A stretch of DNA of 63,941 nt from Octopus bimaculoides (taxonomy: Eukaryota): the NCBI RefSeq assembly GCF_001194135.2, contig NC_068981.1, forward strand, positions 145,859,963-145,923,903, in the 5' to 3' direction. Within the stretch, counting starts at the first letter, position 1, and each line of letters begins with the position of its first letter. The position numbers and the translations under genes were made by a program. This document shows, piece by piece, positions 8,571 through 45,099 of this stretch. Below the pieces are notes generated by a model that was not told the origin of the DNA, ran no database searches, and saw only the letters and a list, made by a program, of their open reading frames with translations.

Positions 8571-10253
8571 TGCAGTTCTTTTAACCATATACTCGCTTGT
8601 TGAATTACCGTAATTCCTCGAGTATAGTCCATCCTTGAGTATAATACGCAGGGGATTTTTAGGAGGCTGTACCTCTGAAAAACCTAAACCTTGTGTATAA
8701 TACGATCACTTCTCTAACTTGAGTCTAGGAGGTCTATATAACGTCCTTAGTTTGTAAACATATATACGGTAACGTCCTTTATTATTATTGTATATATAAC
8801 ATAATGCAAACGTGTAGCTTTTTGTGCCCTTTGTTTGCAGAAAATAAAGAAATAACAGTAATAACGTCAGTGAAAAATAAATATTAAGTAANNNNNNNNN
8901 NNNNNNNNNNNNNNNNNNNNNNNNNNNNNNNNNNNNNNNNNNNNNNNNNNNNNNNNNNNNNNNNNNNNNNNNNNNNNNNNNNNNNNNNNNNNNNNNNNNN
9001 NNNNNNNNNNNNNNNNNNNNNNNNNNNNNNNNNNNNNNNNNNNNNNNNNNNNNNNNNNNNNNNNNNNNNNNNNNNNNNNNNNNNNNNNNNNNNNNNNNNN
9101 NNNNNNNNNNNNNNNNNNNNNNNNNNNNNNNNNNNNNNNNNNNNNNNNNNNNNNNNNNNNNNNNNNNNNNNNNNNNNNNNNNNNNNNNNNNNNNNNNNNN
9201 NNNNNNNNNNNNNNNNNNNNNNNNNNNNNNNNNNNNNNNNNNNNNNNNNNNNNNNNNNNNNNNNNNNNNNNNNNNNNNNNNNNNNNNNNNNNNNNNNNNN
9301 NNNNNNNNNNNNNNNNNNNNNNNNNNNNNNNNNNNNNNNNNNNNNNNNNNNNNNNNNNNNNNNNNNNNNNNNNNNNNNNNNNNNNNNNNNNNNNNNNNNN
9401 NNNNNNNNNNNNNNNNNNNNNNNNNNNNNNNNNNNNNNNNNNNNNNNNNNNNNNNNNNNNNNNNNNNNNNNNNNNNNNNNNNNNNNNNNNNNNNNNNNNN
9501 NNNNNNNNNNNNNNNNNNNNNNNNNNTTTTTCAGCTGAAACCATGAGTTTCAGCTGGTGCAGTTTGGAGTTTAGGTTTTCGAATCCTGTATCACTAAATC
9601 ACCCCTCTAGTTTTTTTTTTTTTTTTCTGAGCTCTTTCTGATGCCGTATCAAGTTGTTCTCTGTATTACATTTTATAACTAAAACAATCTGTGAGATACG
9701 TTTTCGCAGAAATAAAATTTTATTCTTTAAGTACATACCGATGCTCCTTCAGGCTTTCCACTTCAATCTCGATCGCGTGGTCTCAGCTCTTTGCTATACG
9801 TTAGTAACATAATAGCTGAGATATATGTCAAAGCATTAATAGTTTTGTAGGTTGTCTTCATATATAACTGGACAGTGTGACCTTCGGATATTTGTTTACT
9901 ATTTCGTTTACTGCCTCTAATTCTAATTTACTTGGTTCTTTACTTATACCTGGTGTTGTATGGCCTGTCATTTAAATTAAGGTCATGGACCTGTTGAAAT
10001 ATATCATTTAAGATCACTCATGAAGCGTCTATAAGTTTTCGGTGTTCTTCTGTTTGTACAGTATAGGTATAGATTTCAGCTATTATTGTTGGTGCATGCA
10101 TAGACATGGCGCCTTCATTATCAGACGTACAGGCATAAACGACTGTTTAAAAATGCCGTTCTGAACGTTTCCTTCCATAGTTATGCGACTCATCCAGCCT
10201 AAATGAATATCTGTCATAAATGAGAGGAACTTCTTTTTTGTACCAACTGAATT

Positions 10254-29845: not shown

Positions 29846-31088
29846 NNNNNNNNNNNNNNNNNNNNNNNNNNNNNNNNNNNNNNNNNNNNNNNNNNNNNNN
29901 NNNNNNNNNNNNNNNNNNNNNNNNNNNNNNNNNNNNNNNNNNNNNNNNNNNNNNNNNNNNNNNNNNNNNNNNNNNNNNNNNNNNNNNNNNNNNNNNNNNN
30001 NNNNNNNNNNNNNNNNNNNNNNNNNNNNNNNNNNNNNNNNNNNNNNNNNNNNNNNNNNNNNNNNNNNNNNNNNNNNNNNNNNNNNNNNNNNNNNNNNNNN
30101 NNNNNNNNNNNNNNNNNNNNNNNNNNNNNNNNNNNNNNNNNNNNNNNNNNNNNNNNNNNNNNNNNNNNNNNNNNNNNNNNNNNNNNNNNNNNNNNNNNNN
30201 NNNNNNNNNNNNNNNNNNNNNNNNNNNNNNNNNNNNNNNNNNNNNNNNNNNNNNNNNNNNNNNNNNNNNNNNNNNNNNNNNNNNNNNNNNNNNNNNNNNN
30301 NNNNNNNNNNNNNNNNNNNNNNNNNNNNNNNNNNNNNNNNNNNNNNNNNNNNNNNNNNNNNNNNNNNNNNNNNNNNNNNNNNNNNNNNNNNNNNNNNNNN
30401 NNNNNNNNNNNNNNNNNNNNNNNNNNNNNNNNNNNNNNNNNNNNNNNNNNNNNNNNNNNNNNNNNNNNNNNNNNNNNNNNNNNNNNNNNNNNNNNNNNNN
30501 NNNNNNNNNNNNNNNNNNNNNNNNNNNNNNNNNNNNNNNNNNNNNNNNNNNNNNNNNNNNNNNNNNNNNNNNNNNNNNNNNNNNNNNNNNNNNNNNNNNN
30601 NNNNNNNNNNNNNNNNNNNNNNNNNNNNNNNNNNNNNNNNNNNNNNNNNNNNNNNNNNNNNNNNNNNNNNNNNNNNNNNNNGGGGCGGAAGTCTTGCCAA
30701 CTTGTTCATTGGCTGCTACTGAGCACACTATCAAGGTGACCAGTAACTCTCTGTAGAATATATCACTAAATGAAAGGTTCATTATAAAAATATAATATAA
30801 TTGATAAGAGTAGTCTCGAAGCAGTGCAAGTCTTAATTTCGTTTCTACATGATTTTATTGTAAGAATTAAAACCAATTTATTTAGTGATAATTTGTTTGT
30901 AAACAAAAGAAAATATAAACAACACTTCTATCCCGCAGCAAGATTTTTACGTCCTTGATACTCGTGTGTATATTTACGCGCGGTATTGACACTGCTCTTG
31001 CGTTATCTTAGAGAAGTCGGTGATTGCCAGAGATCCTCGTAGATAACTTACGATTAAAAACGTGTATAATTTTTCATTATCTTCAACG

Positions 31089-31226
31089 ATGGTTTTAAAC
31101 GTGAAGTCTGTTTTAGTCACTGGTAGTAGTCGTGGAATAGGTCTTGAATTCGTGAAGCAACTTTTAAGGTTACCCACGCCCCCTCGCTATGTATTTGCAA
31201 CTTGTCGTAATCCAGAAAAAGCCGAG
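31089..31226 (+). CDS. C-factor/CsgA-like short-chain dehydrogenase, exon 1
   Basis: MVLNVKSVLVTGSSRGIGLEFVKQLL...ATCRNPEKAE; TGxxxGxG Rossmann motif; donor gag/gtaaat. Confidence 0.93.
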
Positions 31227-31801
31227 GTAAATAGACCTGTTTGTTTTTTTCTTTTCGAAAATAATAACTTATATGGTACGTTTTCGTACATGTGCATTTT
31301 GCATGTCTAACGATAATATATTGCTCTATACATTATCAAATAAATATGTAATGTAAATAAAACTGATATGTATCATTATTTCTCTTCTAGATAGCAGTTT
31401 TTCTCAAGAAATTTTATTAGCACCAGCGAAACCAATTTGTTTATATTAATCAGTGTGTGTTGGGTGCGCTCGTGTGTTCGCGACACTTTGGACATGTCCT
31501 CTACCGTTATCACAGTTAGATCCGATTCTTGTACGTTAATTTAGGTAACGAAATCAGGGATTCTGTTCGATAGATTGTCTGTAATGCCAAGAGCAGTTAA
31601 ACTTTTTCTTGATGAAATTTCCTTTTTAATTTTTTAATTTCATCAACATAACCATTATTAACACATTCGAAATGTGCTTCAGCAAAATTTCATTTAAAAA
31701 AGTGTTGTTAAGGAGATAACAATTTCGAGGAAGGAAGGCACCAAATTGTAGTTATTATGACAAACAAGTTTAACTGGTCGAAACACTGAAAAACTGTGTG
31801 C

Positions 31802-31846
<45 letters not shown>

Positions 31847-32058
31847 CATACGAGTGTGGGTATTTATATCAGATATTTTCGATTTGGCACACCAGATCCA
31901 ATTTTTATGAACATTTCTTTCATACATGTATACAGATAGTCTGTTACTCTCTCGCATGTATACAATATAAAAATAGCCACAGTTCGACCTCCCAAAGACC
32001 TAAGATCAAATATTGATTTACAGAAACTGTAGAAGCCCATCATTGAATCTACTCTGGG

Positions 32059-32542
32059 CAATGTCCTATTTTAACGTTGTAAATTATTTGCACCATTAAA
32101 ATTAAAAATAAAATTTTAAAAATACATAAAATATAGGTTACATATAAAAAAAGAAATTGGCGGAGGTAAAGAATACGCACACCACCCGTTTTCGGCGGAA
32201 CCCTAATCCCAAACACCGGGTGTGCGTATCCTTTATCTTCGCTTAAAAAAATTAACTAAATTTGCAGTGTAATAAAAAAGTTATTAACTTTTAAATTTCT
32301 ATGTAGAGAATGGTACACAAGTTTTAAAAAAATGAAAATTTAAACAAATTAAAAATAGTATTTTAATTATCCCACGATTATATGATATATTTCAAAGATT
32401 ATATCAAAAAAATGTTATCAAAAATATTTACAACGGATATTGTTCCTTAACACTTACAATAAAGTTTTCAAATACATTGTCATGATGATTATTTTGCCAA
32501 ATAATGGCACAAATAATTTTCAACGTTAAAATCGGAAATTAT
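32059..32542. mobile_element. Fold-back MITE in SDR intron 1
   Basis: Outer inverted repeat aatgtcctattttaacgttgtaaattatttgcaccatta / taatggcacaaataatttttcaacgttaaaatcggaaatt plus inner inverted repeat 32165-32240. Confidence 0.6.
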
Positions 32543-33338
32543 TTCGACTTAGTTCTTTGGTAATACATTTAATTCAGTTGGTATCACATTCCGACCCTTG
32601 GCCCACTCATGTGGTATTGTGTCTCTGGTTTTTTGTACCACCATTACCGTAGCCTCTACTCTTCGAACCAGGCTTGTCTCTATCACCTCTACTCAGGCAT
32701 TCCTAGCTCACTTTTCATCTTCAGGTCTGGTGCCAACCCCTCCACCTAGTACTTCATTCCCAGAAAATCGGCAACTTTTGAATTTTCTTCCAACGCTTTT
32801 TGTTTTCTTTTTGCCTGTAGCTGTCACCATGCAACCGTTTTAGAACAACGTTAACAGTAGTGAATCTTTTGAATTCCTGTGATTGTGAGGGACACTGCCA
32901 TTCTCCCAGACCAGAACGAAAAAAATATAATTACAGCTACGGTATCATTGATTGCAGTTCTGCTTGAACGGAGCTAAACATGCTAAATGTATTAGCGAGT
33001 ACTTGACACTAGCTATGTAGGTTCTACTTAATATTTTGTATAAATTAGCAGAAGGCTGTGCCCATGACTATTGCTTACCTCCTACTCCTTAGATCAATGT
33101 GATCGATGAGACTTGCATTCAGCTTTTAACATTTGCATATCCGAAGGGAAAATAAAGTTTGTTGCTGGAGGAGGGATGTCCCAGAGAGTTGTAGCTCCAG
33201 TAAGAGATGCTTGTGTAGTAGCATGAAACAAAGAATTTTCTAAATTTCTACCACCACCCTAGTCTATTATGTTAACTAATTGTTAATGATATATATCATC
33301 AGCAATAGTAATGCTGTTATTTTGTTTTCTCATTCTAG

Positions 33339-33390
33339 GATTTGCAGTCATTGAAAAAGGATAATTCAAACCTACGTATTGTTCCTTTAG
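33339..33390 (+). CDS. C-factor-like SDR, exon 2
   Basis: Acceptor cattctag, DLQSLKKDNSNLRIVPL+G, donor gtagga; phase 0 in, phase 1 out. Confidence 0.88.
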
Positions 33391-33559
33391 GTAGGATTAT
33401 TTTTTTCCTTACTATTAATTCCATCAAAATTGCAACTTATCTTTTGTTGATGAGATATCACATTGCTAATGAAAATATCAAAGTTTGTGTACTGTTATTG
33501 TTACTCTGCTGTATTCATGGCCATTGAATTGTTATTAACCCAATCCACATCATCGTTCA

Positions 33560-33840
33560 TCGTTTAACGTCTGCTTTCCATGCTAGCATGGGTTGGACGA
33601 TTGACTGAGGACTGGCGAACCAGATGGTTACACCAGGCTCCAATCTGATTTGGCAGAGTTTCCACAGCTGGATGCCCTTCCTAATGCCAACCACTCCGAG
33701 AGTGTAGTGGGTGCTTTTACATGCCACCGGCACAAGGCCAATCAGAAATGGTGTATTTTACGTGCCACCTGCACAAGGGCCAGTCCAGCAGTACTGGCAA
33801 CGAACTCACTCGAATGTCTTTTCACATGCCATCCGGCACA
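33560..33840 (-). mobile_element. SINE family C (RTE-type (GAT)n tail)
   Basis: Reverse complement of ...ttaggaagggcatccagctgt...aacccatgctagcatggaaagc.gacgttaaacgatga. Confidence 0.8.
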
Positions 33841-34824
33841 AGTGGTAACCTAATTATAAAAAGCAAATAGCCAAATCTGGTTCAAATTATACACTACTGT
33901 CTTAAAAAAAAAAAAAAAAAAGTAAATCTAGTCCTAGATTCACTTTCTGAAAAGAAATGAAAGTTGGAATGTTGTTGGAAAACCTTTTGATGATAGGTCC
34001 CAGTCTGTTTTAATAGTATTATAGGCTCCCAAGCAACGTTATGTATTAGGCCCTATAGTTCTACTTTTTGAAAGAAAGCTATAGTACATTAGCTCCTAGA
34101 ATCATGGGGTACCCATGCCTTAAGTTGGTACTGGATGGGTATGCTTGATCAGAGCAAACTTATTGCTTACAACAACAACACAATATAGAATCTTTTTTAA
34201 TCCTTCATCATCTGGCATAAAGCTGACTCCTGCTCTAATGTAGTCCTCTTCACCTGGTGGGAAAATATAATAATGGATGTTTCTGAAAGGACCCTAAGGA
34301 TGGGGTTCATGCGAACTCTACCCTTACAACCCCACTAAGGATACTGGGCAGTGAAAATGGATAGATGGATGAACATGTCATGATTGCATGACCCTATCCT
34401 TTTAGTGAGTGAAGCCAGTTGGCTATGCCTATACTTATGCACTGCAATCAAAAACTACAGCCATGACACATTCACTTTGTAGATATGTCTGTTTCCTGTA
34501 ATCTTCCCACAAAATAGGATACAAAATAGTCTAATGTGTTAGAGATTGAAATATAAAGTTAACAAATGCAAGTTCAGCATGAAATAGCAACCAAATAACC
34601 CTCAAATACCATATTAAATGAAGAATATGTTGGAGAATTTAGTTCCTGTTATATGGAATATTGGTCATAACTTTCCAATCATATACTTGCTCAGTCAGAA
34701 CTAACTTAGAGCTAAGCTGCAGCCTCAGTTACCCAATATCATTTTATGTCATTCCTCAAACTATTGGAAAAGCAGCCAAATCTTTGTCGAGTCACCATGC
34801 AAATTTTCATGAATAAAGAACTTA

Positions 34825-35000
34825 AAAAGCACCCATTACACTCTTGGAGTGGTTGGTGTTAGGAAGGGCATCCTGCCGTAGAAACTATGCTAAATCAGAT
34901 TGAAACATGGTGTAGCCCTACAACTTACCAGTCTAAGTCAAACCATCTAACCCATGCCAACATGGAAAAGAGACACTAAATGATGATGATGATGATGGAG
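34825..35000 (+). mobile_element. SINE family C copy
   Basis: aaaagcacccattacactcttggagtggttgg...tgatgatgatgat. Confidence 0.75.
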
Positions 35001-35237
35001 TCTTACATGCCTCATAAAAGACACAATGGTCACAGCTAGAATGTCTTTGATCATAGATATCTGCTCAGAACTAAGCAGCACCCATATATCCAATTCCATC
35101 AGATAAAACTCTCTACTTGACAAGATGTAATTGAAAATCTTTGAAATAACTCTGTAAGACACTTTAAGAGATTGTCTCATTGAAGTTTAGAAGAATCATT
35201 ACAGAAAATATTTTAATTTTTTTTGTTTTTATTTCAG

Positions 35238-35425
35238 ATATCTGTGATGAAACTTCTATAATAAAAGCTAAAGAAGCAGTTGAAAATGAAGTAGAAGACA
35301 ATGGGTTAAACTTATTGATTAACAATGCTGGTTTGAAATTGAGTATTACTTTTGAAAAACTCAACTTTGATTCTATGATGGAAGCCTTCAAAACCAATGC
35401 TGTTGCTCCAAGTGTTTTGACTAGG
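35238..35425 (+). CDS. C-factor-like SDR, exon 3
   Basis: Acceptor tttcag; (D)ICDETSI...GLNLLINNAG...FKTNAVAPSVLTR; donor gtaagt. Confidence 0.93.
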
Positions 35426-35464
35426 GTAAGTTGTTTTTTTTGTTCCCTTCTTTTATTTTTGTTT

Positions 35465-35852
35465 GCTTCTGTCTTTAAACTGTGGCCATGCTGTGGCACC
35501 ACCTTGAAGAAATTTTGGTCGAATGAGTCAACCCCAGTACTTATTTTTCTTTTGTTTTTTAAGCCTGGTACTTATTTTATCGATCTCTTTTGCCAAACCG
35601 TTAAGTTACAGGGATGTAAACACCCCAACACCAGTTGTTAAGCAGTAGTGGGGCACAAACAACAGACACAACCCCCCCCCCCCTCCACACACACACACAA
35701 CGAGCTTCTTTCAGTTTCTATCTTCCAAATCCACTCACAAACTTTTGGTTGGCCAGAGGCTATAGTAGAAGATACTCACACAAGGTACCACACGGTGGGA
35801 CTGAACCCGAAACAGTGTGGTTGAAAAGCAAGCTTCTTACCAGACAGCCATG
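35465..35852 (-). mobile_element. tRNA-derived SINE family B
   Basis: Reverse complement of the family best seen at 62550-62927. Confidence 0.75.
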
Positions 35853-35879
35853 CCTGTACCTATTTTTTTTTGAGGTGGG

Positions 35880-36260
35880 TCTTTACATTTTGAGTTCAAA
35901 TTCCGCCAAGTTTAACTTTGCCTTTCATCCTTTCGGGGTCAATAAAATAAGTACCAATTGAACACTGGAGGTTGATGTAAACAACTTATCCCCTTCTTCA
36001 AACTTGCTGGCTTTGTGCCAAAATTTAAAATTGATATTTTTGAGGTGGGTAAGGTGGCGAGCCAAGTAAAAAGGTGGCAAGCCAAATAAAATCGTTGGTA
36101 AGCCAAGTAAAATGCTTAACCAAAGTTGACTTTGCCTTTCATCCTTTTGAGGTCAGTAAAATAAGTACCAGTTGAGCACTGGAATTGATATAATCAATTT
36201 ATATCAACACCTATCCCCACAATTGCTGTCCTTGTGCCAAAATTTGAGACCAATATTTTT
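35880..36260 (+). mobile_element. Two partial SINE family A copies
   Basis: gcctttcatcctttcggggtcaataaaataagtacc and gcctttcatccttttgaggtcagtaaaataagtacc. Confidence 0.7.
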
Positions 36261-36704
36261 GAGGAGGGTATGAGCTGTTTTGGTACAACCATTTTGATGC
36301 TGCCTATTTGGCATCACTGATTTGATGCTGACTTTATTTATCTTCAGACATTTTGAAGTTTTTCTTGTTTCTTTTCCCCTCTGCCTCTGTTTATTTATTT
36401 GAGCATCTGATTATGTTTGTATGCATGTGCAGTTTCTCTCTCTCTCTCTCTCTCTCTCTACCTGCATGTGTATATCTTTGCATACAAGCATTTCAGTCAT
36501 ACTTTTCTCAGTCATTAGACTATGGCCATACTGGGGCACTGCCTCGAAGAGTCTTTAGTTGAATGAATTGACCTTAGTACTTTCTCTTTTAAGCCTGGTA
36601 CTTCTTCTCTTTTGCTGAACTGCTAAGTTATGGGGATATAAACAAACCAACACCAGTTGTGTGGTGGTGATAAGGGACAAACATAGGCACAAAGACCACA
36701 AATC

Positions 36705-36975
36705 TTACTGGTAGATGGCCCTGCTTGATATGTAGAAAAGGCGTAAGTAGAAACTCCATAAGATGTAGTAAGCTATGGACATAAAAGATGCAGCAATATC
36801 AGGGGAAGGTTAACATGGAAAATAGCTTTTGTGTGTGGAAGATGCACAGGTGCAATAAACACTGAAAATGTACAGAAAATAGACTCCAACAACTGCCAGG
36901 TGGGTAAGCTAGAGGTAGTAGATAGCTTCCATTATCTAGGTGACCAAGTTAGTAGTGGAGGTGGATGCTCTGAGA
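36705..36975 (+). mobile_element. RTE LINE fragment (Cys-rich region)
   Basis: Diverged copy of 39160-39420. Confidence 0.7.
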
Positions 36976-37334
36976 GATTATGGTGAAAGATTATGGTTAA
37001 AAAAAAATTATAATGACTTTCTCTATTTGAATAAAAAGATTCACGTGAATGTTTATAAGAAAGTCATTTAAAGTTTTCTTTGTTTATCCATTCATTTATT
37101 TAATATCCATTTCTCAGTGCTTGTGTAAGTTTAACCAAGACTTATTTCAGGCAGTGTTTTATTGCCAGCACATACATGCTTTTCAAGTCAGGGAATCTTT
37201 TATTCCACTTCGATAGCACAGAGCAATGGTTTGTCATATCAACAAGGAATGCAAAACCAAAGAATGACAAAATATGCACACATATGCTTGTGTGTGCATG
37301 CTTACATACACATGGCAATCTTTCATACACTTTC

Positions 37335-37690
37335 CCTTAACCAATTGGACTCGAACATCATTGGTTGGCCTGGGCTTATAGTAGAAAATGCCTGAGTTGC
37401 TGCATAGTGGGACTGAACCCCAAACCTTGGTGGTTGCAAAGCAGTCTTCTTGTTAACACAGCTATATCTGTATCTATTTATTCAACAGATTTCAGTCTCA
37501 CTTTTTACATGGTTACAGATGTGGCTGAGTGGTTAAGAGGCTTGATTCCAAACCATCAAGTCTTGGGTTCAAGTCTCACTGTGTTGCACCTTGGGAAAGT
37601 TCCTTCTATTATCACCTTGAGTCGACCAAAGCCTTGTGCATGGATTTGGTAAGGAAAAACTGGAAGAAGCCTAATGTGTGTGTGTGTATA
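37335..37690. mobile_element. Head-to-head pair of SINE family B 5' ends
   Basis: Minus copy 37335-37465, plus copy 37518-37690. Confidence 0.65.
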
Positions 37691-38196
37691 TGTGCATGCA
37701 TTTGTGTGTGTGTGTGTGTACAGATATGTCTGTATGTATATATGTGTGTGTGTGTGTGTGTACAGATATGTCTGTATGTATATATGTGTGTGTGTGTGTG
37801 TGTTTGTATGTGCTCTTGTCTAGATAACATGTGATAATTGTAAATGAGTCCTATTGTCAAGAAACAACATGCAAGGTTTCCAGTTTTCCCTGAAAAACAT
37901 GTCTGGCCATGGAAAATATTACCTTGCTTGTGAAAAGGTGAGAGTTGGCAATGGGATGGGCATCTAGCTGTCGAAACCTGCCTCAATGTATTCCATCTGA
38001 TACATGCAAGCATGAACATTTAGATGTTAAATGATGATGATGATTTTGGTCTTATTTTCTATCAACAGCAGATCAACATAAACATACGTTCATTTGATGT
38101 TGTTCTCTCTGTTTCCTGATCTATATTGTTTTTAAATCTCTCAGTAAATAAAATGTACAAATTTTTCATTTTTGAAATTTTTTTTTATATCTTCAG

Positions 38197-38352
38197 ATAT
38201 TTTTCCCTTTACTGAAGGTAGCAGCTGCAAAGGAGAACCCTTCTTCAAATTTGTCTTGTAATCGTGCTGCAGTTGTGAATATCAGTAGCATATTAGGGTC
38301 TGTTACTGCTACTCGAAATAGCACATTTTTCTATGAATATTCTTCTTCAAAG
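38197..38352 (+). CDS. C-factor-like SDR, exon 4 (catalytic Ser and YxxxK)
   Basis: Acceptor cttcag; IFFPLLKVAA...AAVVNISSILGS...YEYSSSK; donor gtaagt. Confidence 0.93.
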
Positions 38353-39079
38353 GTAAGTATTAAAATTTCTTGCATTCTTCAACTGTCATCTATTCTTCCT
38401 TCTGTGAGAATATAAGAAAAAGCTGCATTTTTAATTTATGCCGGGATATAAAAAAACAATGTGGATGATAATACAAATTAAAGAAAAAACAACAAAACTG
38501 AAGATCAAATAAATGACCCTAAATTTTAGTTCAGTCAAATCACATAAGGGATAAGTTGTTAAAGCATCAAATAAAATGCCTTGTGGTATTTGTTCTGACA
38601 TTTGGTACACTGAGTTCAAATCCCACCAAGATTAGCTTTGCCTTTCATCCTTTTGAGGGAAAATAAAAAAAAAAGTACCAATCTAGAGAATTGGATTGAT
38701 GGAACTGTAAGAATGTTGTATGGGATGCCTCATATTTTTTCTTGTCATATTTCTTCTTGCCTTATATTTTTTTCTCACTCCCTTGTCATGGCTTACTTAG
38801 GTGTAGACTTAATCCGTGTTACCTAGTTTAATACCCATAACTGATACTTGGGTGACTTTAGTAGAATCCACTATGTTGCAAGCATTTGGGTCATTTCTCT
38901 GGTTTTACAGTACCTTTCTCCCTACTTCTCACCTGTCATTGAGTATTTGCTTGTTTAGCCCCTGCATCAATTCTGACTGAGCCTGTAGAGATGTTTGTCA
39001 TACCTTATTTCTTATTTGCTTTGCTTGAGCAAAAAAAAACAAAACAACAACAGGGTGTGAAACCAAGGTCTAGAATCGA

Positions 39080-39900
39080 AGTACCTTAGGGTTAACCTAG
39101 CAAAAAATAAAGTCTTAGTAAGTAGGAAGGCTGTCAAATCACAATCCCCTTCAGGTAGATGGCCCTGCTCGATCTGTAGAAAAAGCGTGGATAGAAACTC
39201 CATACGATATACTCGGTGTAAGCTATGGACACATAAAAGGTGCAGCAATATCAAAGGAAGGTTAACCAGGAAAATAGTATTTGTGTGTGGCAGATGCACA
39301 GGAGCAATAAATACTGAAGATGTACAGAAAACAGATTCCATCACATGCCAGGTGGAGAAACTAGAAGTAGTTAATAGCTTCTGCTACCTAGGTGACCAAG
39401 TCTGTAGTGGGGGTGGTTACTCTGAGCAAAGTTCAGGGAGCTCCTATCTCTTCTGGCAACTAACGGCTTCTCACTCAGGATGAAAGGTAGACTATATGAT
39501 GCATGTATGTGAAATGCCATGCTATGCAGCAGTGAAACATGGGCCATGACTGCTGAGAAAATGCGTAGGCTTGAAAGAAATGAAGCTAATATGATCTGCT
39601 GGATGTGTAATGTCAGTGTGCATACAAAGCAGAGTGTAAGTGCCCTGAGAGAAAAGTTGGGCATAAGAAGCATCAAATGTGGTGTGCAAGACAGATGACT
39701 GTACCGGTATGGTCATGTGTTACATATGGATGAGGATAGCTGTGTGAGGAAGTGCCACTCCCTAACTGTGGAAGAGGTAGACCCAGGAAGACATGGGATG
39801 AGGTGGTGAAGCATGACTTTCGAACATTGGGCATCACAGAGGCAATGACAGGAGACCGAAACCTTTGGAGATATGCTGTGATTGAGAAGACCCAGCAACT
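39080..39900 (+). mobile_element. RTE-clade LINE 3' fragment
   Basis: RCKLWTHKRCSNIKG...CGRCTG...LEVVNSFCYLGDQ, then degenerate post-RT region. Confidence 0.8.
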
Positions 39901-39929
39901 AAAGTGAAATGGCAGCCACGCATGTCTGG

Positions 39930-40420
39930 CCCAGTTAAAAGTACCCCTGATGTGTTGGACGATATGATATGCTTGGGAAGACCTGTTGAGTCAAGTAAAA
40001 CCAATATCGTAGCTGTGGCCTGACTCGCTCCTGTGCCAGTGGCACGTAAAAAGCACCATCTGAACGTGGCTGATGCCAGTACTCCCTGACTGGCTCTTGT
40101 GCTGGTGGCACTTAAAAAGCACCATCCAAATGTGGCTGATGCCAGTATCCCCTGACTGGCCCCGGTGCCGGTGGCATGTAAAAAGCACTATCTGAATGTG
40201 ATTGATGGCAGGCCCACCCGACTGGCTCCTGTGCCTGTGGCACGTAAAAAACACCCACTACACTCTTAGAGTGGTTGGCTTTAGGAAGGGCATCCAGCTA
40301 TAGAAACATTGCCAGATCAGATTGGAGCCTGGTGCAGCTGCTGGCTCTCCAGACCTCAGTCAAACCAGCCAATCCATGCCAGCATAGAAAACGGATGTTA
40401 AACAATGATGACGGCAGTGG
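39930..40420 (+). mobile_element. SINE family C with four 66-bp head repeats
   Basis: ggcacgtaaaaagcacc-like motif at 40041, 40107, 40173, 40239. Confidence 0.8.
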
Positions 40421-41040
40421 CGGCAATGATGACAAATGGAACTTCTGTCTCCTTGAACACCATGAATAACTTTTCTTTGCAGATACTTTGTGATATGCTT
40501 ATAATGAAATCCTTTTAGGCTGAATTCCAAACAATAGCCTTTTGTAAATAAAGTGGTAGGATGTGTAACTCATTGACCATCATGCATTCTTCCTGATAAC
40601 CACTTCCCACTTGATTTTCTACTCCACCTACAAAACTTTATTCAAATTTAATATTAACCACATATATCTTACTCCTATGTCCAGACTTTGGAATGCATAA
40701 AATGGCTAGGAGCATTATACTTCCTTTACAGTCTATTTAATAAAAAAGTAAGCCAGTGAAGGAGCCTTTACAAAGCTGCTTGATCTGTTTGGAATAATAT
40801 TTAAATCTCCCTCAAATTAGATCTACCATCTTGAACAGATAAGGATACGTTACAGATTGCCAAAAAGAAAGGATGGTCATAGCTGATCATAAGTCTACTC
40901 AGTCAGGGCTGACCTGGGGTTAAATGGCATCAACAACCTTGTAAAAAATATAATAAAGTATCAAAAAATTATGTTTAAAATAAACGAAACAAAAGAATAG
41001 ACATTGTTTTCAAAACATCATTTTTATTTATTTATTTCAG

Positions 41041-41262
41041 GCTGCTTTAAATATGATTACCAAGGATTTTGGGATTCACTTAAAACCTCACAATGTGCTT
41101 GCTGTGGCTCTTCACCCAGGATGGGTACAAACTGATATGGGAGGTAAAAATGCTAATTTGACTCCAGAATCAAGCGTGAAACAATCACTGAATACTCTGT
41201 CAACGTTAAATGAAAGCAATGCTGGTTTTCTTATTGACTACCAAGGATCTGTCATTCCTTAG
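41041..41262 (+). CDS. C-factor-like SDR, exon 5 (terminal)
   Basis: Acceptor tttatttcag; AALNMITKDFG...VALHPGWVQTDMGG...GFLIDYQGSVIP then TAG TAA; spliced product 251 aa. Confidence 0.93.
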   Translation, partial: AALNMITKDFGIHLKPHNVLAVALHPGWVQTDMGGKNANLTPESSVKQSLNTLSTLNESNAGFLIDYQGSVIP

Positions 41263-41271
41263 TAAGGTTTG

Positions 41272-41277
41272 AATAAA
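41272..41277 (+). terminator. Candidate polyadenylation signal (second AATAAA at 41445-41450)
   Basis: AATAAA shortly after the SDR stop; hexamer is common in AT-rich DNA. Confidence 0.4.
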
Positions 41278-41704
41278 ATTGTACAGAATAGGAGAGGGCA
41301 ATAATTTTCATTAAAGGGTTAGATTGGCATGTTTGGAAAATCTAATCTTATGTAGCCGAATTTTATAAAATAGTTTTGGTTTTGGCAGGTATTATCAATT
41401 TCAACTTTTTTATAATCATGTAATTGTTAATAGTAATTCTGATTAATAAACTTTAGAAAATATTTTCTCACATTCGACGTGACATATATGTTGGACCAAA
41501 CAGACACTATGTTAGAATGTTTTTTGGGTCCAGATTATGTAAAATTGTAGCTATGGATTCAACCAATTTTTTAATATGTTTTTATAAAATTTAATAATTT
41601 TCTCTCATTCTAATATGACAATGATGTGTTCAATATGAATTAGAATTCTAATAAAATGTGTTACATGTAACAGATGCAGAATTAGATTAAAATAGCAATT
41701 TGTT

Positions 41705-41970
41705 TATCTTTTACTTGTTTCAATCATTAGACTGTGGCCATGCTGGCACACAGCCTTGAGGAATTTTTAGTTGAATGTATCAACCCCAGTACTTACTTTT
41801 TATAAGCCTGGTACTTTTTCTATCAGTCTTTTGCCGAACCACTAAGTTACAGAGACATAAACACACCAGCACTGGTTGTCAAGTGGTAGTGGGGGGACTG
41901 GACATGAAACGCAGTGGGACTGAACATGAAACCATATGACTGAGAAGCAAGCTTCTTACCATACAGCCAT
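41705..41970 (-). mobile_element. SINE family B copy
   Basis: ttttacttgttt...gtggccatgctgg...aagcttcttacca.acagcca. Confidence 0.7.
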
Positions 41971-42349
41971 GCTAAAAAGCCAGCTTATTGCAGTATTCTC
42001 CAGGGGATAATATCTCTTACGAACGTGCTGTGTTTAAAAACACAAAATACACCAATATATTTTGTGTTTTTAAACACAGCACAAGCATAAGAGATATTGT
42101 TTCCAGATGAATACCATGACATTACGTTTTTCACAAGTGTCTTTTCCTTTGCAAGTTTGTATTAAGTCCATTTAAATACAGCAAACATAAAATTTGATAT
42201 CCAATTTTTATCATATAGCTGCAGTAAGTCAGGTGATTTTTCTTTCATTTCTAAAAATAGTTTAATGTCATTTTTCAAATTCCGTCCAATGTTGAAAACT
42301 TATCTTAAATTTAACCTGTGTCATTTGTGTGGTGTAGAGCTGAGATCAT

Positions 42350-42772
42350 TTATGTATTCTGCTTCTGACCCTTAGACTGGTTCCCGTGCTGGTAGCACGT
42401 AAAAAGCACCATCCGAACGTGGTTGATGCCAGGTCCACTCGACTGGCTCCCATGCCAGTAGGACGTAAAAAGCACCAACCCATCGTGGCTGATGCCAGTA
42501 CCCCCTCACTGACACTTGTGCTGGAGGCACGTAAAAAGCACCATCCAAATGTGGTTGATGCCAGGCCCTCATGCCGGTGGCATGTAAAAAGCACCCACTA
42601 CATTCTCGGAGGGGTTGGCATTAGGAAGGGCATCCAGCTGTAGAAACATTGTCAGATCAAATTGGAGTCTGGTGCAGCAGCTGGCTCACCAGACTTCAGT
42701 CAAACCGTCCAACCCATGCTAGCATGGAAAATGGACGTTAAACGAAGATGATGATGATGATGATGATGATGA
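42350..42772 (+). mobile_element. SINE family C with 66-bp head repeats and (GAT)n tail
   Basis: Units at 42394, 42460, 42526, 42579; tail gatgatgatgatgatgatgat. Confidence 0.8.
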
Positions 42773-42779
42773 CTAAAGA

Positions 42780-43860
42780 GGCTAATTCTTGCATGGAAGC
42801 ATCTATTGCAAAGTTTACAAGGGATCTGTGGTGTAGGTTTTGGTAGTTGCAGATTCTATTTTCTTTCTTGTCATTTCTTTTCTTCTTTCCTCTGTCGTTC
42901 ATCTTCAAAATGATCCATCACAGTGGAGATGGAATGATGCCTGCCAGGTCTGTCCTGAGCTTCAGTGTCCCAGGCTTTGGGATTGATTCCAGTCAGTTTT
43001 AGGCTTTGCTTTAGATAGTCCTTGTATTGCTGGCGAACATCTTGCATCTGCCACCAACATGCAGGTCTGGACTAAGAACTTCTAGTTTCACCAAACCTGC
43101 TCTCACCATTCTTACCCCATCACTATTGGGATTATGTAGAGGAAAAAATAAATAAAAAAAGGGAAAGGAAGTGTTGAATCGAAAAGAAACTAGCCAAGGG
43201 TGTGAGTTTGTTTAGGATGGAGATCTTGGCAAGGAGGTCTCCACGCACTATCGCCCAAAATCCATCTGCCGTGGCACTACCTAGAGTGACATGTGAGGCA
43301 CAGATGATTGGTTGCAATGGAATGCTGCTAGCTCCAATGTCATTAAAGTTGTGTCTTTCTAACCAGTCCATCTGATATTGCCCCATTCTGCTAGGATCAG
43401 TTGTTGAGTTTAGAGATGTAGCTTCCTCTGCTTGATCCACCATTGCGGTCTTTGTTTGGTGTGGTGAGGGACAAGGACAGTGTTTCTGTACCCTTGTTTG
43501 AACAGATCTTGTTTCTAGTTCTGATGGGTGCCCTCACACCCTCCTCCAAGACCCAGTAAGCTGAACAGAGAGGGGAGTCAGTTTAGCCGCAGACAACCTG
43601 ACTATGACTGAGAGAAGTGGGAGTACATGCTTACCCGTTGTCTCCAAGAAGAGACATCAGCACCAAGGACAGTGCTCCTGTGTCCTTGTATGAACAGATC
43701 TTGTTTTTAGTTCTGATGGGTGCCCTCACACCCTCCTCCAAGATCCAGTAAGCTGAACCGAGAGGGGAGCCAGTTTAATTGCCAACGACCCAACCATGAC
43801 TGAAAGGAGTGGGAGTACATGGTTACTTGTTGTCGCCTAGAAGAGACCTCAACACCAAGC
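42780..43860 (-). mobile_element. Degenerate RTE-like LINE with 192-bp tandem duplication
   Basis: Weak RTE C-terminal similarity at 42800-43100; duplicated units 43472-43663 and 43664-43855. Confidence 0.45.
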
Positions 43861-45099
43861 AGCCTAGATTACCATTGACCTGTTCCACTCAGATGGTCCA
43901 TCATTGTTGTTCCTTAGCCCCAGGTCAGTTGGTCAAAGACATTCTAGCTGTGACCATCTTGCCTTTTCATACATCAAGGACTGCATTATACTTCGATTTG
44001 AAAGATTGTAATTTGTAGTATGAGAAAGTTTTGGTTGCTATTTCTGGCAGGTTGAATGATCACATGAAGATTCCCTTGTAGTTGAACATCTGGGTATGAT
44101 TCATAGAGCTTATGCTCCAGATACACCATTCCTTCACCTGTTTCTAAACCAACTCTTTTTTTACTCAGCTGGAGATTAGTTACAAAGTGTTTACAAATGT
44201 TTTCATTGCTATTTTCAATATTGAGCATCTTTTTTTTCTCTTTGGTGAAAGGTTTTAATGAAACATCAAAATTCTTGCTTCAAAATGTCATTTAAACTTA
44301 TCTAAATTTGTAAACTTTTTAAAGTATTTTTTTAATCTACAAACTACCTTGAGTTATTTTTAATTATTAGTTGTTCTTTAACAATAAAACACTGAAAAGA
44401 ACATTTTTTAGAAGGAGAATATCCTTTATGATGAACTATTGAATGTCTCACTGTGCTGTAGGTCTTCTTCTTTCTTTGACACATCATCTAAACTTATTAA
44501 AATTTATAAGCTTTACAAAATATTTTTTACCAACTCACTACCTCGGAGCTTTTCTTTTATTTGTTGGTTGTTCCTTAATAAAACAATGAAAAAAATTGGT
44601 TTGTTTTTAATTATTCAGATGCAGGAGAACACTTTTTATTATAACAATTTATGTTAGAATGGCTATGCAAAGACATGGTATGTCTCTTGAAGAACAACTC
44701 TATGGATGACAACCAGTTATTCAACTGATTGCTTGTGTGTCATGTGTCTGCTCAATCAGAATGTGCAAAGAGCACAGTTGGTTGTCATAGCATGACCAAT
44801 CTTCGCTATCCTTGCCATTGCATGTTCATTCATCCCCATTTTCCTAAATATATCTACAACATCCTGAAACATGGGACAACAACAATCATGACATGTCACA
44901 AAAATAAAACAACATTAAGCAAGGAAACAACAAAGAGAAACCTGTCATATACAACTGTGAAACAGTTGTACATGACATTAACCAGACAACAAACTGTTAA
45001 TTGCTCTCCAATATTTTTAACAACAATAACAACGATACTAGCAACAACCTCAGCACATCATGTTTCATTAACCATTTTAAGTAACATATGTTGGTGTCA

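What the first reader, a model, noticed from the sequence alone, without database searches (positions are those of the whole stretch)
41257..41270. SDR ends CCT TAG TAA where the family has Pro-Trp-stop: editing-dependent Trp or a palindrome-driven nonsense change
Seen: ...DYQGSVIP is followed by TAG (41260-41262) and immediately TAA. Established: C-factor/CsgA/sniffer SDRs typically end in D/N-x-x-G-x-x-x-P/A-W, and TAG is one transition from TGG. A-to-I editing turns UAG into UIG (read as Trp), UAG is the preferred ADAR context, and coleoids recode extensively. Inference: editing of A41261 would restore the full C terminus with the next codon as the true stop. Alternative also visible: TGG>TAG perfects the quasi-palindrome ccttAgtaagg, a template-switch signature, and that local hairpin puts the A at the loop, which is a poor ADAR site unless a distant complementary sequence exists.
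Basis: partly seen in the sequence, partly recalled or inferred. Interest (0 to 1): 0.7.

Follow-up and report, generated by a model that had tools for sequence, protein, structure and literature searches.

The report
Octopus reductase gene lost its last tryptophan
An octopus short-chain reductase gene ends one residue early because the codon for its usually conserved final tryptophan became a stop codon; this is most likely an ordinary, tolerated truncation and not a site repaired by RNA editing.

Summary
Window 41257-41265 reads CCT TAG TAA, at the end of an intact five-exon SDR gene identical to Octopus bimaculoides XP_014791131.1. The family ends in Trp in 113 of 120 full-length homologues, and in Pro-Trp in 98. 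TAG sits on the Trp codon and TAA on the family's stop.

TAG is not an assembly error. O. vulgaris and O. sinensis carry the same CCT TAG TAA. The Argonauta hians orthologue has CCT GAG TAA, ending in Pro-Glu, so Trp is not needed in this orthologue group.

The gene is under purifying selection (dN/dS 0.20-0.36). In the small clade around it the last residue is stop, Glu, Met or Trp. All four lineages have also lost a 96%-conserved Arg next to the catalytic Tyr.

Nothing supports RNA editing:
- A41261 is predicted unpaired in every fold.
- No complementary partner stands out from controls.
- The flanks are no more conserved than intron.
- Published octopus editomes list only 2-4 edited TAG stops per species.

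The 11-nt palindrome is chance level, with 76 like it in the window. Editing could not be tested directly because no RNA reads were available. Verdict: ordinary one-residue truncation, low interest.

The parts
31089..31226 (+). Exon 1 of the SDR gene (Met1-Glu46). It holds the NADP-binding motif TGSSRGIG, residues 11-18.
   Evidence: tblastn mapping and splice-site check. The assembled 251-aa product is an exact match to XP_014791131.1 of O. bimaculoides.
33339..33390 (+). Exon 2, 52 nt, encoding DLQSLKKDNSNLRIVPL plus the first base of Asp64.
   Evidence: tblastn with the O. vulgaris orthologue P0121 gives 100% identity, and the exon has ag/gt borders.
35238..35425 (+). Exon 3, containing the NNAG motif (residues 92-95).
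38197..38352 (+). Exon 4, with the NISSILGS segment (residues 154-161, where the catalytic Ser of sniffer-type SDRs is expected), catalytic Tyr174 and Lys178. Codon 38341-38343 (Ser175) replaces an Arg that is 96% conserved in the family.
41041..41259 (+). Coding part of exon 5, AALNMITK...DYQGSVIP, including the HPGWVQTDMGG motif.
41260..41262 (+). TAG, the functional stop codon. It lies in the alignment column of the family's terminal Trp (TGG). A41261 is the proposed editing target.
   Evidence: The codon is identical in O. vulgaris (L001 17083-17085) and O. sinensis (L002 17059-17061). Argonauta hians has GAG here (L003 19268-19270).
41263..41265 (+). TAA, a relic of the ancestral stop codon. 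It is still the working stop in Argonauta.
41257..41267 (.). CCTTAGTAAGG, a palindrome with 5-nt arms around one central base. It is judged to be a chance feature.
   Evidence: 76 palindromes of this form occur in the window. The sequence is absent in Argonauta, which has CCTGAGTAAAT.
41650..41691 (+). Two poly(A) signals, AATAAA at 41650 and ATTAAA at 41686, conserved in all three Octopus species. They mark the likely end of the 3' UTR, about 400 nt after the stop (inferred).
   Evidence: Identity to O. vulgaris drops from about 92% to 77% beyond +400.

Best explanation
The feature is a plain one-residue C-terminal truncation. In an ancestor of the genus Octopus, a G-to-A transition turned the last sense codon, TGG (Trp), into TAG. 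By parsimony this happened before the split from Argonauta. Translation now ends at TAG after Pro251, and the original stop TAA remains directly behind it as an unused tandem stop. The change was tolerated and fixed because the terminal Trp was no longer under strong constraint in this cephalopod branch of the sniffer/C-factor SDR family. That branch had already lost the otherwise nearly invariant Arg next to the catalytic Tyr. The gene itself remains a functional enzyme gene. Shown: the codons, their fixation in three species, the Glu codon in Argonauta, purifying selection, and variable last residues in the clade. Inferred: the direction and timing of the mutation, and the link between losing the Arg and relaxed constraint on the Trp.
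For: - CCT TAG TAA is present in the window and identical in independent assemblies of O. vulgaris and O. sinensis.
- The Argonauta hians orthologue (69% identity, same five exons) has CCT GAG TAA, giving ...VIPE.
- With TGG as the outgroup state, an ancestral TAG needs 2 substitutions, against 3 for any other history.
- All five exons are intact with GT-AG borders, and the product matches the RefSeq protein exactly.
- dN/dS is 0.36 against O. vulgaris (dS 0.068) and 0.20 against Argonauta (dS 0.77).
- The protein is a clear adh_short member (Pfam E 1e-29). Its nearest solved structures are 3wxb (E 2e-62) and sniffer 1sny (E 1e-57).
- 77 alignment columns are at least 80% conserved in the family. 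The octopus orthologues differ at only 7, and the two most conserved of those are Arg175 (96% R) and the terminal Trp (96% W).
- In a neighbour-joining tree, the Octopus/Argonauta orthologues, the Argonauta paralogue P0123 and the transcript family P0244 form one clade (bootstrap 78%). Their last residues are stop, Glu, Trp and Met (CCT ATG TAG). All four lack the Arg.
- Outside this clade, every non-aromatic C-terminus in the set traces to an annotated alternative isoform.
Against: - No RNA data were available, so editing or readthrough at the TAG is not excluded.
- The TAA behind the TAG has been retained. I estimate a probability of about 0.3 for this under neutrality if TAG predates the Argonauta split, so it is uninformative.
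- Only four cephalopod genomes and one unidentified transcript family could be compared, so the timing is weakly resolved.
- The Arg-Trp coupling rests on a few lineages, and no structure was inspected.
Confidence: 0.87

Rival explanations
1. Restorative A-to-I editing. ADAR deaminates A41261, UAG becomes UIG and is read as Trp, translation stops at the next codon TAA, and part or most of the protein carries the ancestral Pro-Trp end.
For: - The A sits in the favoured U-A-G triplet.
- The ancestral base was G, so the site would fall in the 'restorative' class, which is enriched among coleoid recoding sites (PMC8382921).
- Stop-to-Trp editing events do exist in octopus editomes.
- An in-frame TAA follows immediately.
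Against: - A41261 is unpaired in every predicted fold of mature or precursor RNA. P(paired) is 0.01-0.16, and the A lies in a 3-nt loop closed by 4 bp.
- The surrounding 114-nt hairpin is no more stable than shuffled sequence (z = -0.87).
- None of the 25 longest of 71 inverted repeats found within 38000-44500 covers the site.
- The best long-range duplex (-25.3 kcal/mol) equals the mean of 33 control segments (-25.2, sd 5.4).
- Flank identity to O. vulgaris is 96% in the exon and 92% in the 3' flank, against 92.6% in the intron, so there is no extra constraint.
- Argonauta has Glu and P0244 has Met at this position, so selection does not demand Trp here.
- Published tables list only 2 (O. bimaculoides) and 4 (O. 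vulgaris) edited TAG stops, against 133 and 140 TAG stops counted in a companion table whose codon set may not be identical. That is roughly 1.5-3%.
- A squid proteomics and RNA survey ranks stop-to-Trp recoding as non-existent.
- Trp-extended versions of the O. bimaculoides and O. vulgaris proteins are absent from a 15-billion-protein collection that includes transcript assemblies. That collection holds no transcript-derived copy of this gene at all, so this point is weak.
Confidence: 0.04
2. The TGG-to-TAG change arose by template switching within the quasi-palindrome CCTT(G/A)GTAAGG, not by ordinary point mutation.
For: The change lengthens the arms from 4 to 5 nt. Palindrome matches rise from 8 of 11 for TGG to 10 of 11 for TAG.
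Against: - 76 palindromes of the 5+1+5 form and 307 of the 4+3+4 form occur in this 64-kb window.
- One of the two possible single-base nonsense changes of TGG gives this result by chance.
- A single transition is the commonest type of mutation and carries no template-switch signature, since no cluster of changes is seen.
- Argonauta lacks the right arm (TAAAT), so the ancestral presence of the palindrome is unknown.
Confidence: 0.05
3. Independent losses. The common ancestor of Octopus and Argonauta still had TGG. Octopus then acquired TAG, and Argonauta separately changed TGG to GAG in two steps.
For: Terminal residues vary freely in this clade (stop, Glu, Met, Trp), so repeated changes are plausible. 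This history also removes the need to explain long retention of an unused TAA.
Against: It needs 3 substitutions instead of 2, and TAG is the natural intermediate between TGG and GAG (codons).
Confidence: 0.3
4. The gene is decaying, and the premature stop is a first sign of pseudogenisation.
For: Two of the family's most conserved residues are lost, Arg175 and the terminal Trp.
Against: - dN/dS is 0.20-0.36 over a synonymous divergence of up to 0.77.
- There are no other stops or frameshifts.
- All splice sites are canonical in four genomes.
- The NADP motif, NNAG, Tyr and Lys are all kept.
Confidence: 0.03

Closest known systems
Drosophila sniffer (PDB 1sny), chicken carbonyl reductase-like protein (PDB 3wxb) and the 'C-factor-like / C-signal-like' animal SDRs
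   Same: The fold family is the same (E 1e-57 to 2e-62). So are the length, the TGxxxGxG, NNAG and Y-x-x-x-K motifs, the HPGWVxTDMGG motif and the D-Y-x-G-x-x-x-P tail.
   Different: The octopus protein lacks the terminal Trp (96% conserved) and the Arg after the catalytic Tyr (96% conserved). It has Ser instead of Asn in the glycine-rich motif.
Stop-loss (UAG to UGG, stop to Trp) A-to-I recoding sites. Examples are the handful listed in coleoid editomes (Shoshan et al. 2021, PMC8382921), the hepatitis delta virus amber/W site, and premature-stop-correcting editing in fungi (the last two from my own knowledge and the titles).
   Same: The codon is UAG, the ancestral state was UGG, and a further in-frame stop would bound the extension.
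   Different: No RNA/DNA difference has been shown, no duplex is predicted around the A, and the extension would be a single residue that relatives do without.
Harm-permitting (restorative) editing model of Jiang and Zhang 2019, as discussed in PMC8382921
   Same: A G-to-A substitution at a conserved site in a coleoid is the situation the model addresses.
   Different: The model needs the A to be edited. Here the simpler reading is that the substitution was not harmful, because the Trp is replaced by Glu or Met in relatives.

Membership tests
Classical SDR, sniffer / C-factor-like subfamily | Pfam adh_short match above the gathering score | tested here: met
   PF00106 scores 103.5 bits against a cut-off of 26.6, E 1.3e-29.
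Classical SDR, sniffer / C-factor-like subfamily | Cofactor motif TGxxxGxG, the NNAG motif, and the catalytic Tyr-x-x-x-Lys | tested here: met
   TGSSRGIG at residues 11-18, NNAG at 92-95, and Tyr174/Lys178 (YSSSK). The NISSILGS segment at 154-161 aligns to the sniffer Ser region.
Classical SDR, sniffer / C-factor-like subfamily | Subfamily motif HPGWVxTDMGG and the tail D/N-Y-x-G-x-x-x-P | tested here: met
   HPGWVQTDMGG at residues 203-213 and DYQGSVIP at 244-251. The alignments to 3wxb and 1sny run to the end.
Classical SDR, sniffer / C-factor-like subfamily | C-terminal Trp as the last residue | tested here: not met
   The protein ends at Pro251. 113 of 120 homologues end in W.
Classical SDR, sniffer / C-factor-like subfamily | Arg directly after the catalytic Tyr (Y-R-x-S-K) | tested here: not met
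   Ser175 in Octopus, Cys in the Argonauta orthologue, and Arg in 96% of the family.
ADAR stop-loss recoding site | Target A in a favourable triplet (5' U, 3' G) | tested here: met
   UAG at 41260-41262. The triplet preference itself is background knowledge.
ADAR stop-loss recoding site | Target A embedded in a double-stranded RNA region | tested here: not met
   In silico only. P(paired) is 0.01-0.16 in seven contexts, the local fold has z = -0.87, no inverted repeat lies over the site, and the best distant duplex equals the control mean.
ADAR stop-loss recoding site | A in genomic DNA but G in a fraction of RNA reads | not testable with these tools
   No read data were available. No transcript-derived copy of this gene exists in the protein collection.
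ADAR stop-loss recoding site | Raised sequence conservation around the site, as reported for coleoid editing sites | tested here: inconclusive
   Identity to O. vulgaris is 96% in exon 5, 92% in the 3' flank and 92.6% in the intron. There is no excess, but divergence is low (dS 0.068), so the test has little power.
Quasi-palindrome template-switch mutation | The new base is the complement of the opposite arm, and the palindrome is longer than chance would give | tested here: inconclusive
   The A does pair with T41263 in the palindrome, but 76 equal palindromes occur in the window. The ancestral flank is unknown, since Argonauta differs.

The most novel reading that the evidence does not exclude
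A41261 is edited to inosine at a substantial, perhaps tissue-dependent, level in Octopus. The enzyme would then exist in two forms, with and without the ancestral terminal Trp, and the retained TAA would be the true stop of the edited form. This would be a stop-loss editing site conserved across the genus that switches a nearly invariant family residue on and off.
Probability: 0.04. Interest if true: 0.5.

Novelty: already known. Interest (0 to 1): 0.15.

Why it matters
As it stands it matters little. It is a fixed nonsense substitution that trims one residue from a metabolic enzyme, and RefSeq already annotates the protein with exactly this end.

Two small points may interest specialists in this enzyme family. 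First, the terminal Trp, conserved from cnidarians to birds, is dispensable in one cephalopod branch. Second, its loss goes with loss of the Arg next to the catalytic Tyr, which hints that the two residues work together.

If editing were shown, the site would be a clean example of restorative stop-loss recoding. That would bear on the debate between harm-permitting and adaptive editing in coleoids.

Tried and rejected
- **Paralogues in the window.** I looked for a second copy of the exon or gene and found none.
- **Transcript-derived protein copies.** I searched for versions ending in ...VIPW. Neither Trp-extended sequence is in the collection, and the collection holds no transcript-derived copy of this gene at all, so this says little.
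- **Metagenome scan.** A degenerate pattern for the last 11 codons gave no match in metagenome contigs. No collection of eukaryotic genomes was available, so other octopods and squids could not be checked.
- **Pecten maximus P0192.** It also ends in ...IIP and looked like an independent loss. It is only isoform X2 of a gene whose isoform X1 ends in PW.
- **Published editing-site lists.** The relevant supplementary tables (S4 and S5 of PMC8382921) are not held, and the 2017 Cell paper on cephalopod editing is not held.
- **Role of the terminal Trp.** Literature searches on its structural role in sniffer found nothing usable.
- **Long hairpin at 41993-42114 as an editing inducer.** I rejected this. 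It lies about 300 nt beyond the conserved poly(A) signals, and the target A is not in a duplex anyway.
- **Pseudogene reading.** Rejected on dN/dS and intact splice sites.
- **Alternative splicing past the TAG.** The sequence AG|TAAGG has no GT donor.

Full report
**What is there**

The codons close the fifth exon of a plus-strand gene. Its exons are 31089-31226, 33339-33390, 35238-35425, 38197-38352 and 41041-41262, all with canonical ag/gt borders.

The 251-residue product is identical to XP_014791131.1, 'C-factor-like', of Octopus bimaculoides, which identifies the source of the window. It is a clear short-chain dehydrogenase/reductase (Pfam adh_short, E 1e-29). Its nearest solved relatives are chicken 3wxb (E 2e-62) and Drosophila sniffer 1sny (E 1e-57). 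The cofactor motif TGSSRGIG, the NNAG motif, Tyr174/Lys178 and HPGWVQTDMGG are all present.

**Is the family claim true?**

Yes. Of 120 short homologues of the last exon, 103 end in Trp and 73 in Pro-Trp. Of the 120 best full-length homologues, from cnidarians to birds, 113 end in Trp and 98 in Pro-Trp. The octopus protein aligns without a gap up to its last Pro, so TAG falls in the Trp column and TAA on the family's stop. The inference that TAG descends from TGG by one transition is therefore well founded.

**Is it an error or a polymorphism?**

No. Independent assemblies of O. vulgaris (L001) and O. sinensis (L002) carry the same CCT TAG TAA GG.

**The informative relative**

The Argonauta hians orthologue P0122 has 69% identity and the same five exons. 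It reads CCT GAG TAA, so it ends in Pro-Glu and stops at the same TAA. An Argonauta paralogue, P0123, keeps Pro-Trp.

Taking TGG as the outgroup state, an ancestral TAG followed by a T-to-G change in Argonauta needs two substitutions. Any other history needs three. This is parsimony on very few taxa, and I give the alternative of independent changes about 0.3. On either history, this orthologue group does not require the terminal Trp.

**Is the gene alive?**

Yes. dN/dS is 0.36 against O. vulgaris (dS 0.068) and 0.20 against Argonauta (dS 0.77). There is no other disruption in any of the four genomes.

**Why was the loss tolerated?**

77 alignment columns are at least 80% conserved in the family. 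The octopus orthologues depart at only 7. The two most conserved of those are:
- the terminal Trp (96% conserved);
- the Arg directly after the catalytic Tyr (96% conserved), which is Ser in Octopus and Cys in the Argonauta orthologue.

A neighbour-joining tree groups four lineages into one clade with 78% bootstrap support. They are the Octopus/Argonauta orthologues, the Argonauta paralogue, and a transcript family known only from Logan assemblies (P0244, loci L005-L010). I infer that this is a cephalopod clade, but the organism behind P0244 is not known.

In this clade the last residue is stop, Glu, Trp and Met (CCT ATG TAG), and all four lack the Arg. Outside the clade, the only non-aromatic ends in the sample trace to annotated alternative isoforms.

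I infer that loss of the Arg came first and relaxed the constraint on the Trp. This rests on few independent lineages, and I could not inspect a structure.

**Test of the editing idea**

Points in its favour:
- The triplet is UAG.
- The ancestral base was G, which places the site in the 'restorative' class that is enriched in coleoids (PMC8382921).
- Stop-to-Trp editing is known in these animals.

Points against:
- A41261 is predicted unpaired in every context tried. These were mature mRNA with 100-450 nt of 3' UTR and precursor RNA with 100-700 nt on each side. P(paired) is 0.01-0.16, and the A sits in a 3-nt loop closed by the 4-bp stem CCUU/AAGG.
- The wider 114-nt hairpin is no more stable than shuffled sequence (z = -0.87).
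- None of the 25 longest of 71 inverted repeats found in 38000-44500 covers the site.
- The best duplex with any 60-nt stretch between 38353 and 43500 is -25.3 kcal/mol. Thirty-three control segments of the same exon and UTR give a mean of -25.2 with sd 5.4.
- Identity to O. vulgaris is 95.9% in exon 5, 92% in the first 100 nt after the stop and 92.6% in the intron. The extra conservation reported around coleoid editing sites is not seen, although the test is weak at this divergence.
- Shoshan et al. list only 2 edited TAG stops in O. bimaculoides and 4 in O. vulgaris. A companion table counts 133 and 140 TAG stops. The two tables may not use exactly the same set of codons, so the rate of 1.5-3% is approximate.
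- A 2025 preprint on squid ranks stop-to-Trp recoding as non-existent in both RNA and protein data.

Together with the Glu and Met found in relatives, I put substantial editing at about 4%. It was not tested directly. No read data were available, and the protein collections hold no transcript-derived copy of this gene.

**Test of the palindrome idea**

CCTTAGTAAGG has 5-nt arms around one base. The window contains 76 such palindromes, and 307 of the 4+3+4 form that the TGG version would have had. One of the two possible nonsense changes of TGG produces this palindrome by chance. Argonauta lacks the right-hand arm. A single transition needs no special mechanism, and nothing distinguishes a template switch here.

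**Verdict**

The editing interpretation is unsupported but not formally excluded. The palindrome is chance level. The feature is an ordinary, long-fixed, one-residue truncation of a functional enzyme, already reflected in the public annotation. The one mildly interesting by-product is the joint loss of the Arg and the terminal Trp in this branch of the family.

Noticed in passing
window 41993-42114: A near-perfect hairpin with 57-nt arms and an 8-nt loop. MFE is -63.3 kcal/mol and z = -14.3. It is a single copy in the window and 97.8% identical in O. vulgaris, against about 77% for its surroundings. Rfam gives only sub-threshold microRNA-precursor matches. It lies about 300 nt beyond the conserved poly(A) signals of the SDR gene. 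It could be a microRNA-like gene or a foldback element.
   Followed up: partly
window 40019-40255 and 42375-42568: Two arrays of a 66-nt tandem repeat (3.6 and 2.9 copies, 77-80% matches) flank the last exon in the same orientation. Further partial copies lie near 33.7, 50.0, 58.5 and 61.4 kb, some inverted. The repeat is also present at the same intron position in O. vulgaris.
   Followed up: partly
window 38341-38343 (Ser175): The Arg after the catalytic Tyr, 96% conserved in the family, is Ser in Octopus. It is Cys, Gly and Asp in the three related lineages. In the sample, non-aromatic C-termini occur only in proteins that lack this Arg, apart from annotated isoforms.
   Followed up: partly
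L005-L010 (Logan transcript contigs encoding P0244): A related SDR seen in 71 blocks of the Logan transcript collection ends in CCT ATG TAG, with Met in place of the terminal Trp. Cluster members differ by a Ser/Ala change and by start site. The organism is unknown.
   Followed up: partly
window 41272-41277: An AATAAA lies 7 nt after the TAA in O. bimaculoides, but it reads AATAGA in O. vulgaris and O. sinensis. The signals at 41650 and 41686 are conserved in all three.
   Followed up: partly
L004 (Pecten maximus), proteins P0192 and P0243: Two annotated isoforms of one scallop gene differ by only one residue in total length: X1 ends ...IIPW and X2 ends ...IIP. The splice or annotation difference behind this was not resolved.
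   Followed up: partly
window 39187-39907, + strand, in intron 4: Three adjacent open reading frame pieces, with sequences such as ...SSETWAMTAEKMRRLERNE... and ...GRGRPRKTWDEVVKHD.... From memory they look like remnants of a retrotransposon protein. Pfam gave no significant match.
   Followed up: partly
window, 15 runs of N (for example 29846-30681 and 8892-9526): There are 4020 N in 15 gaps, so this is a draft assembly. None of the gaps falls inside the SDR gene (31089-41265).
   Followed up: no
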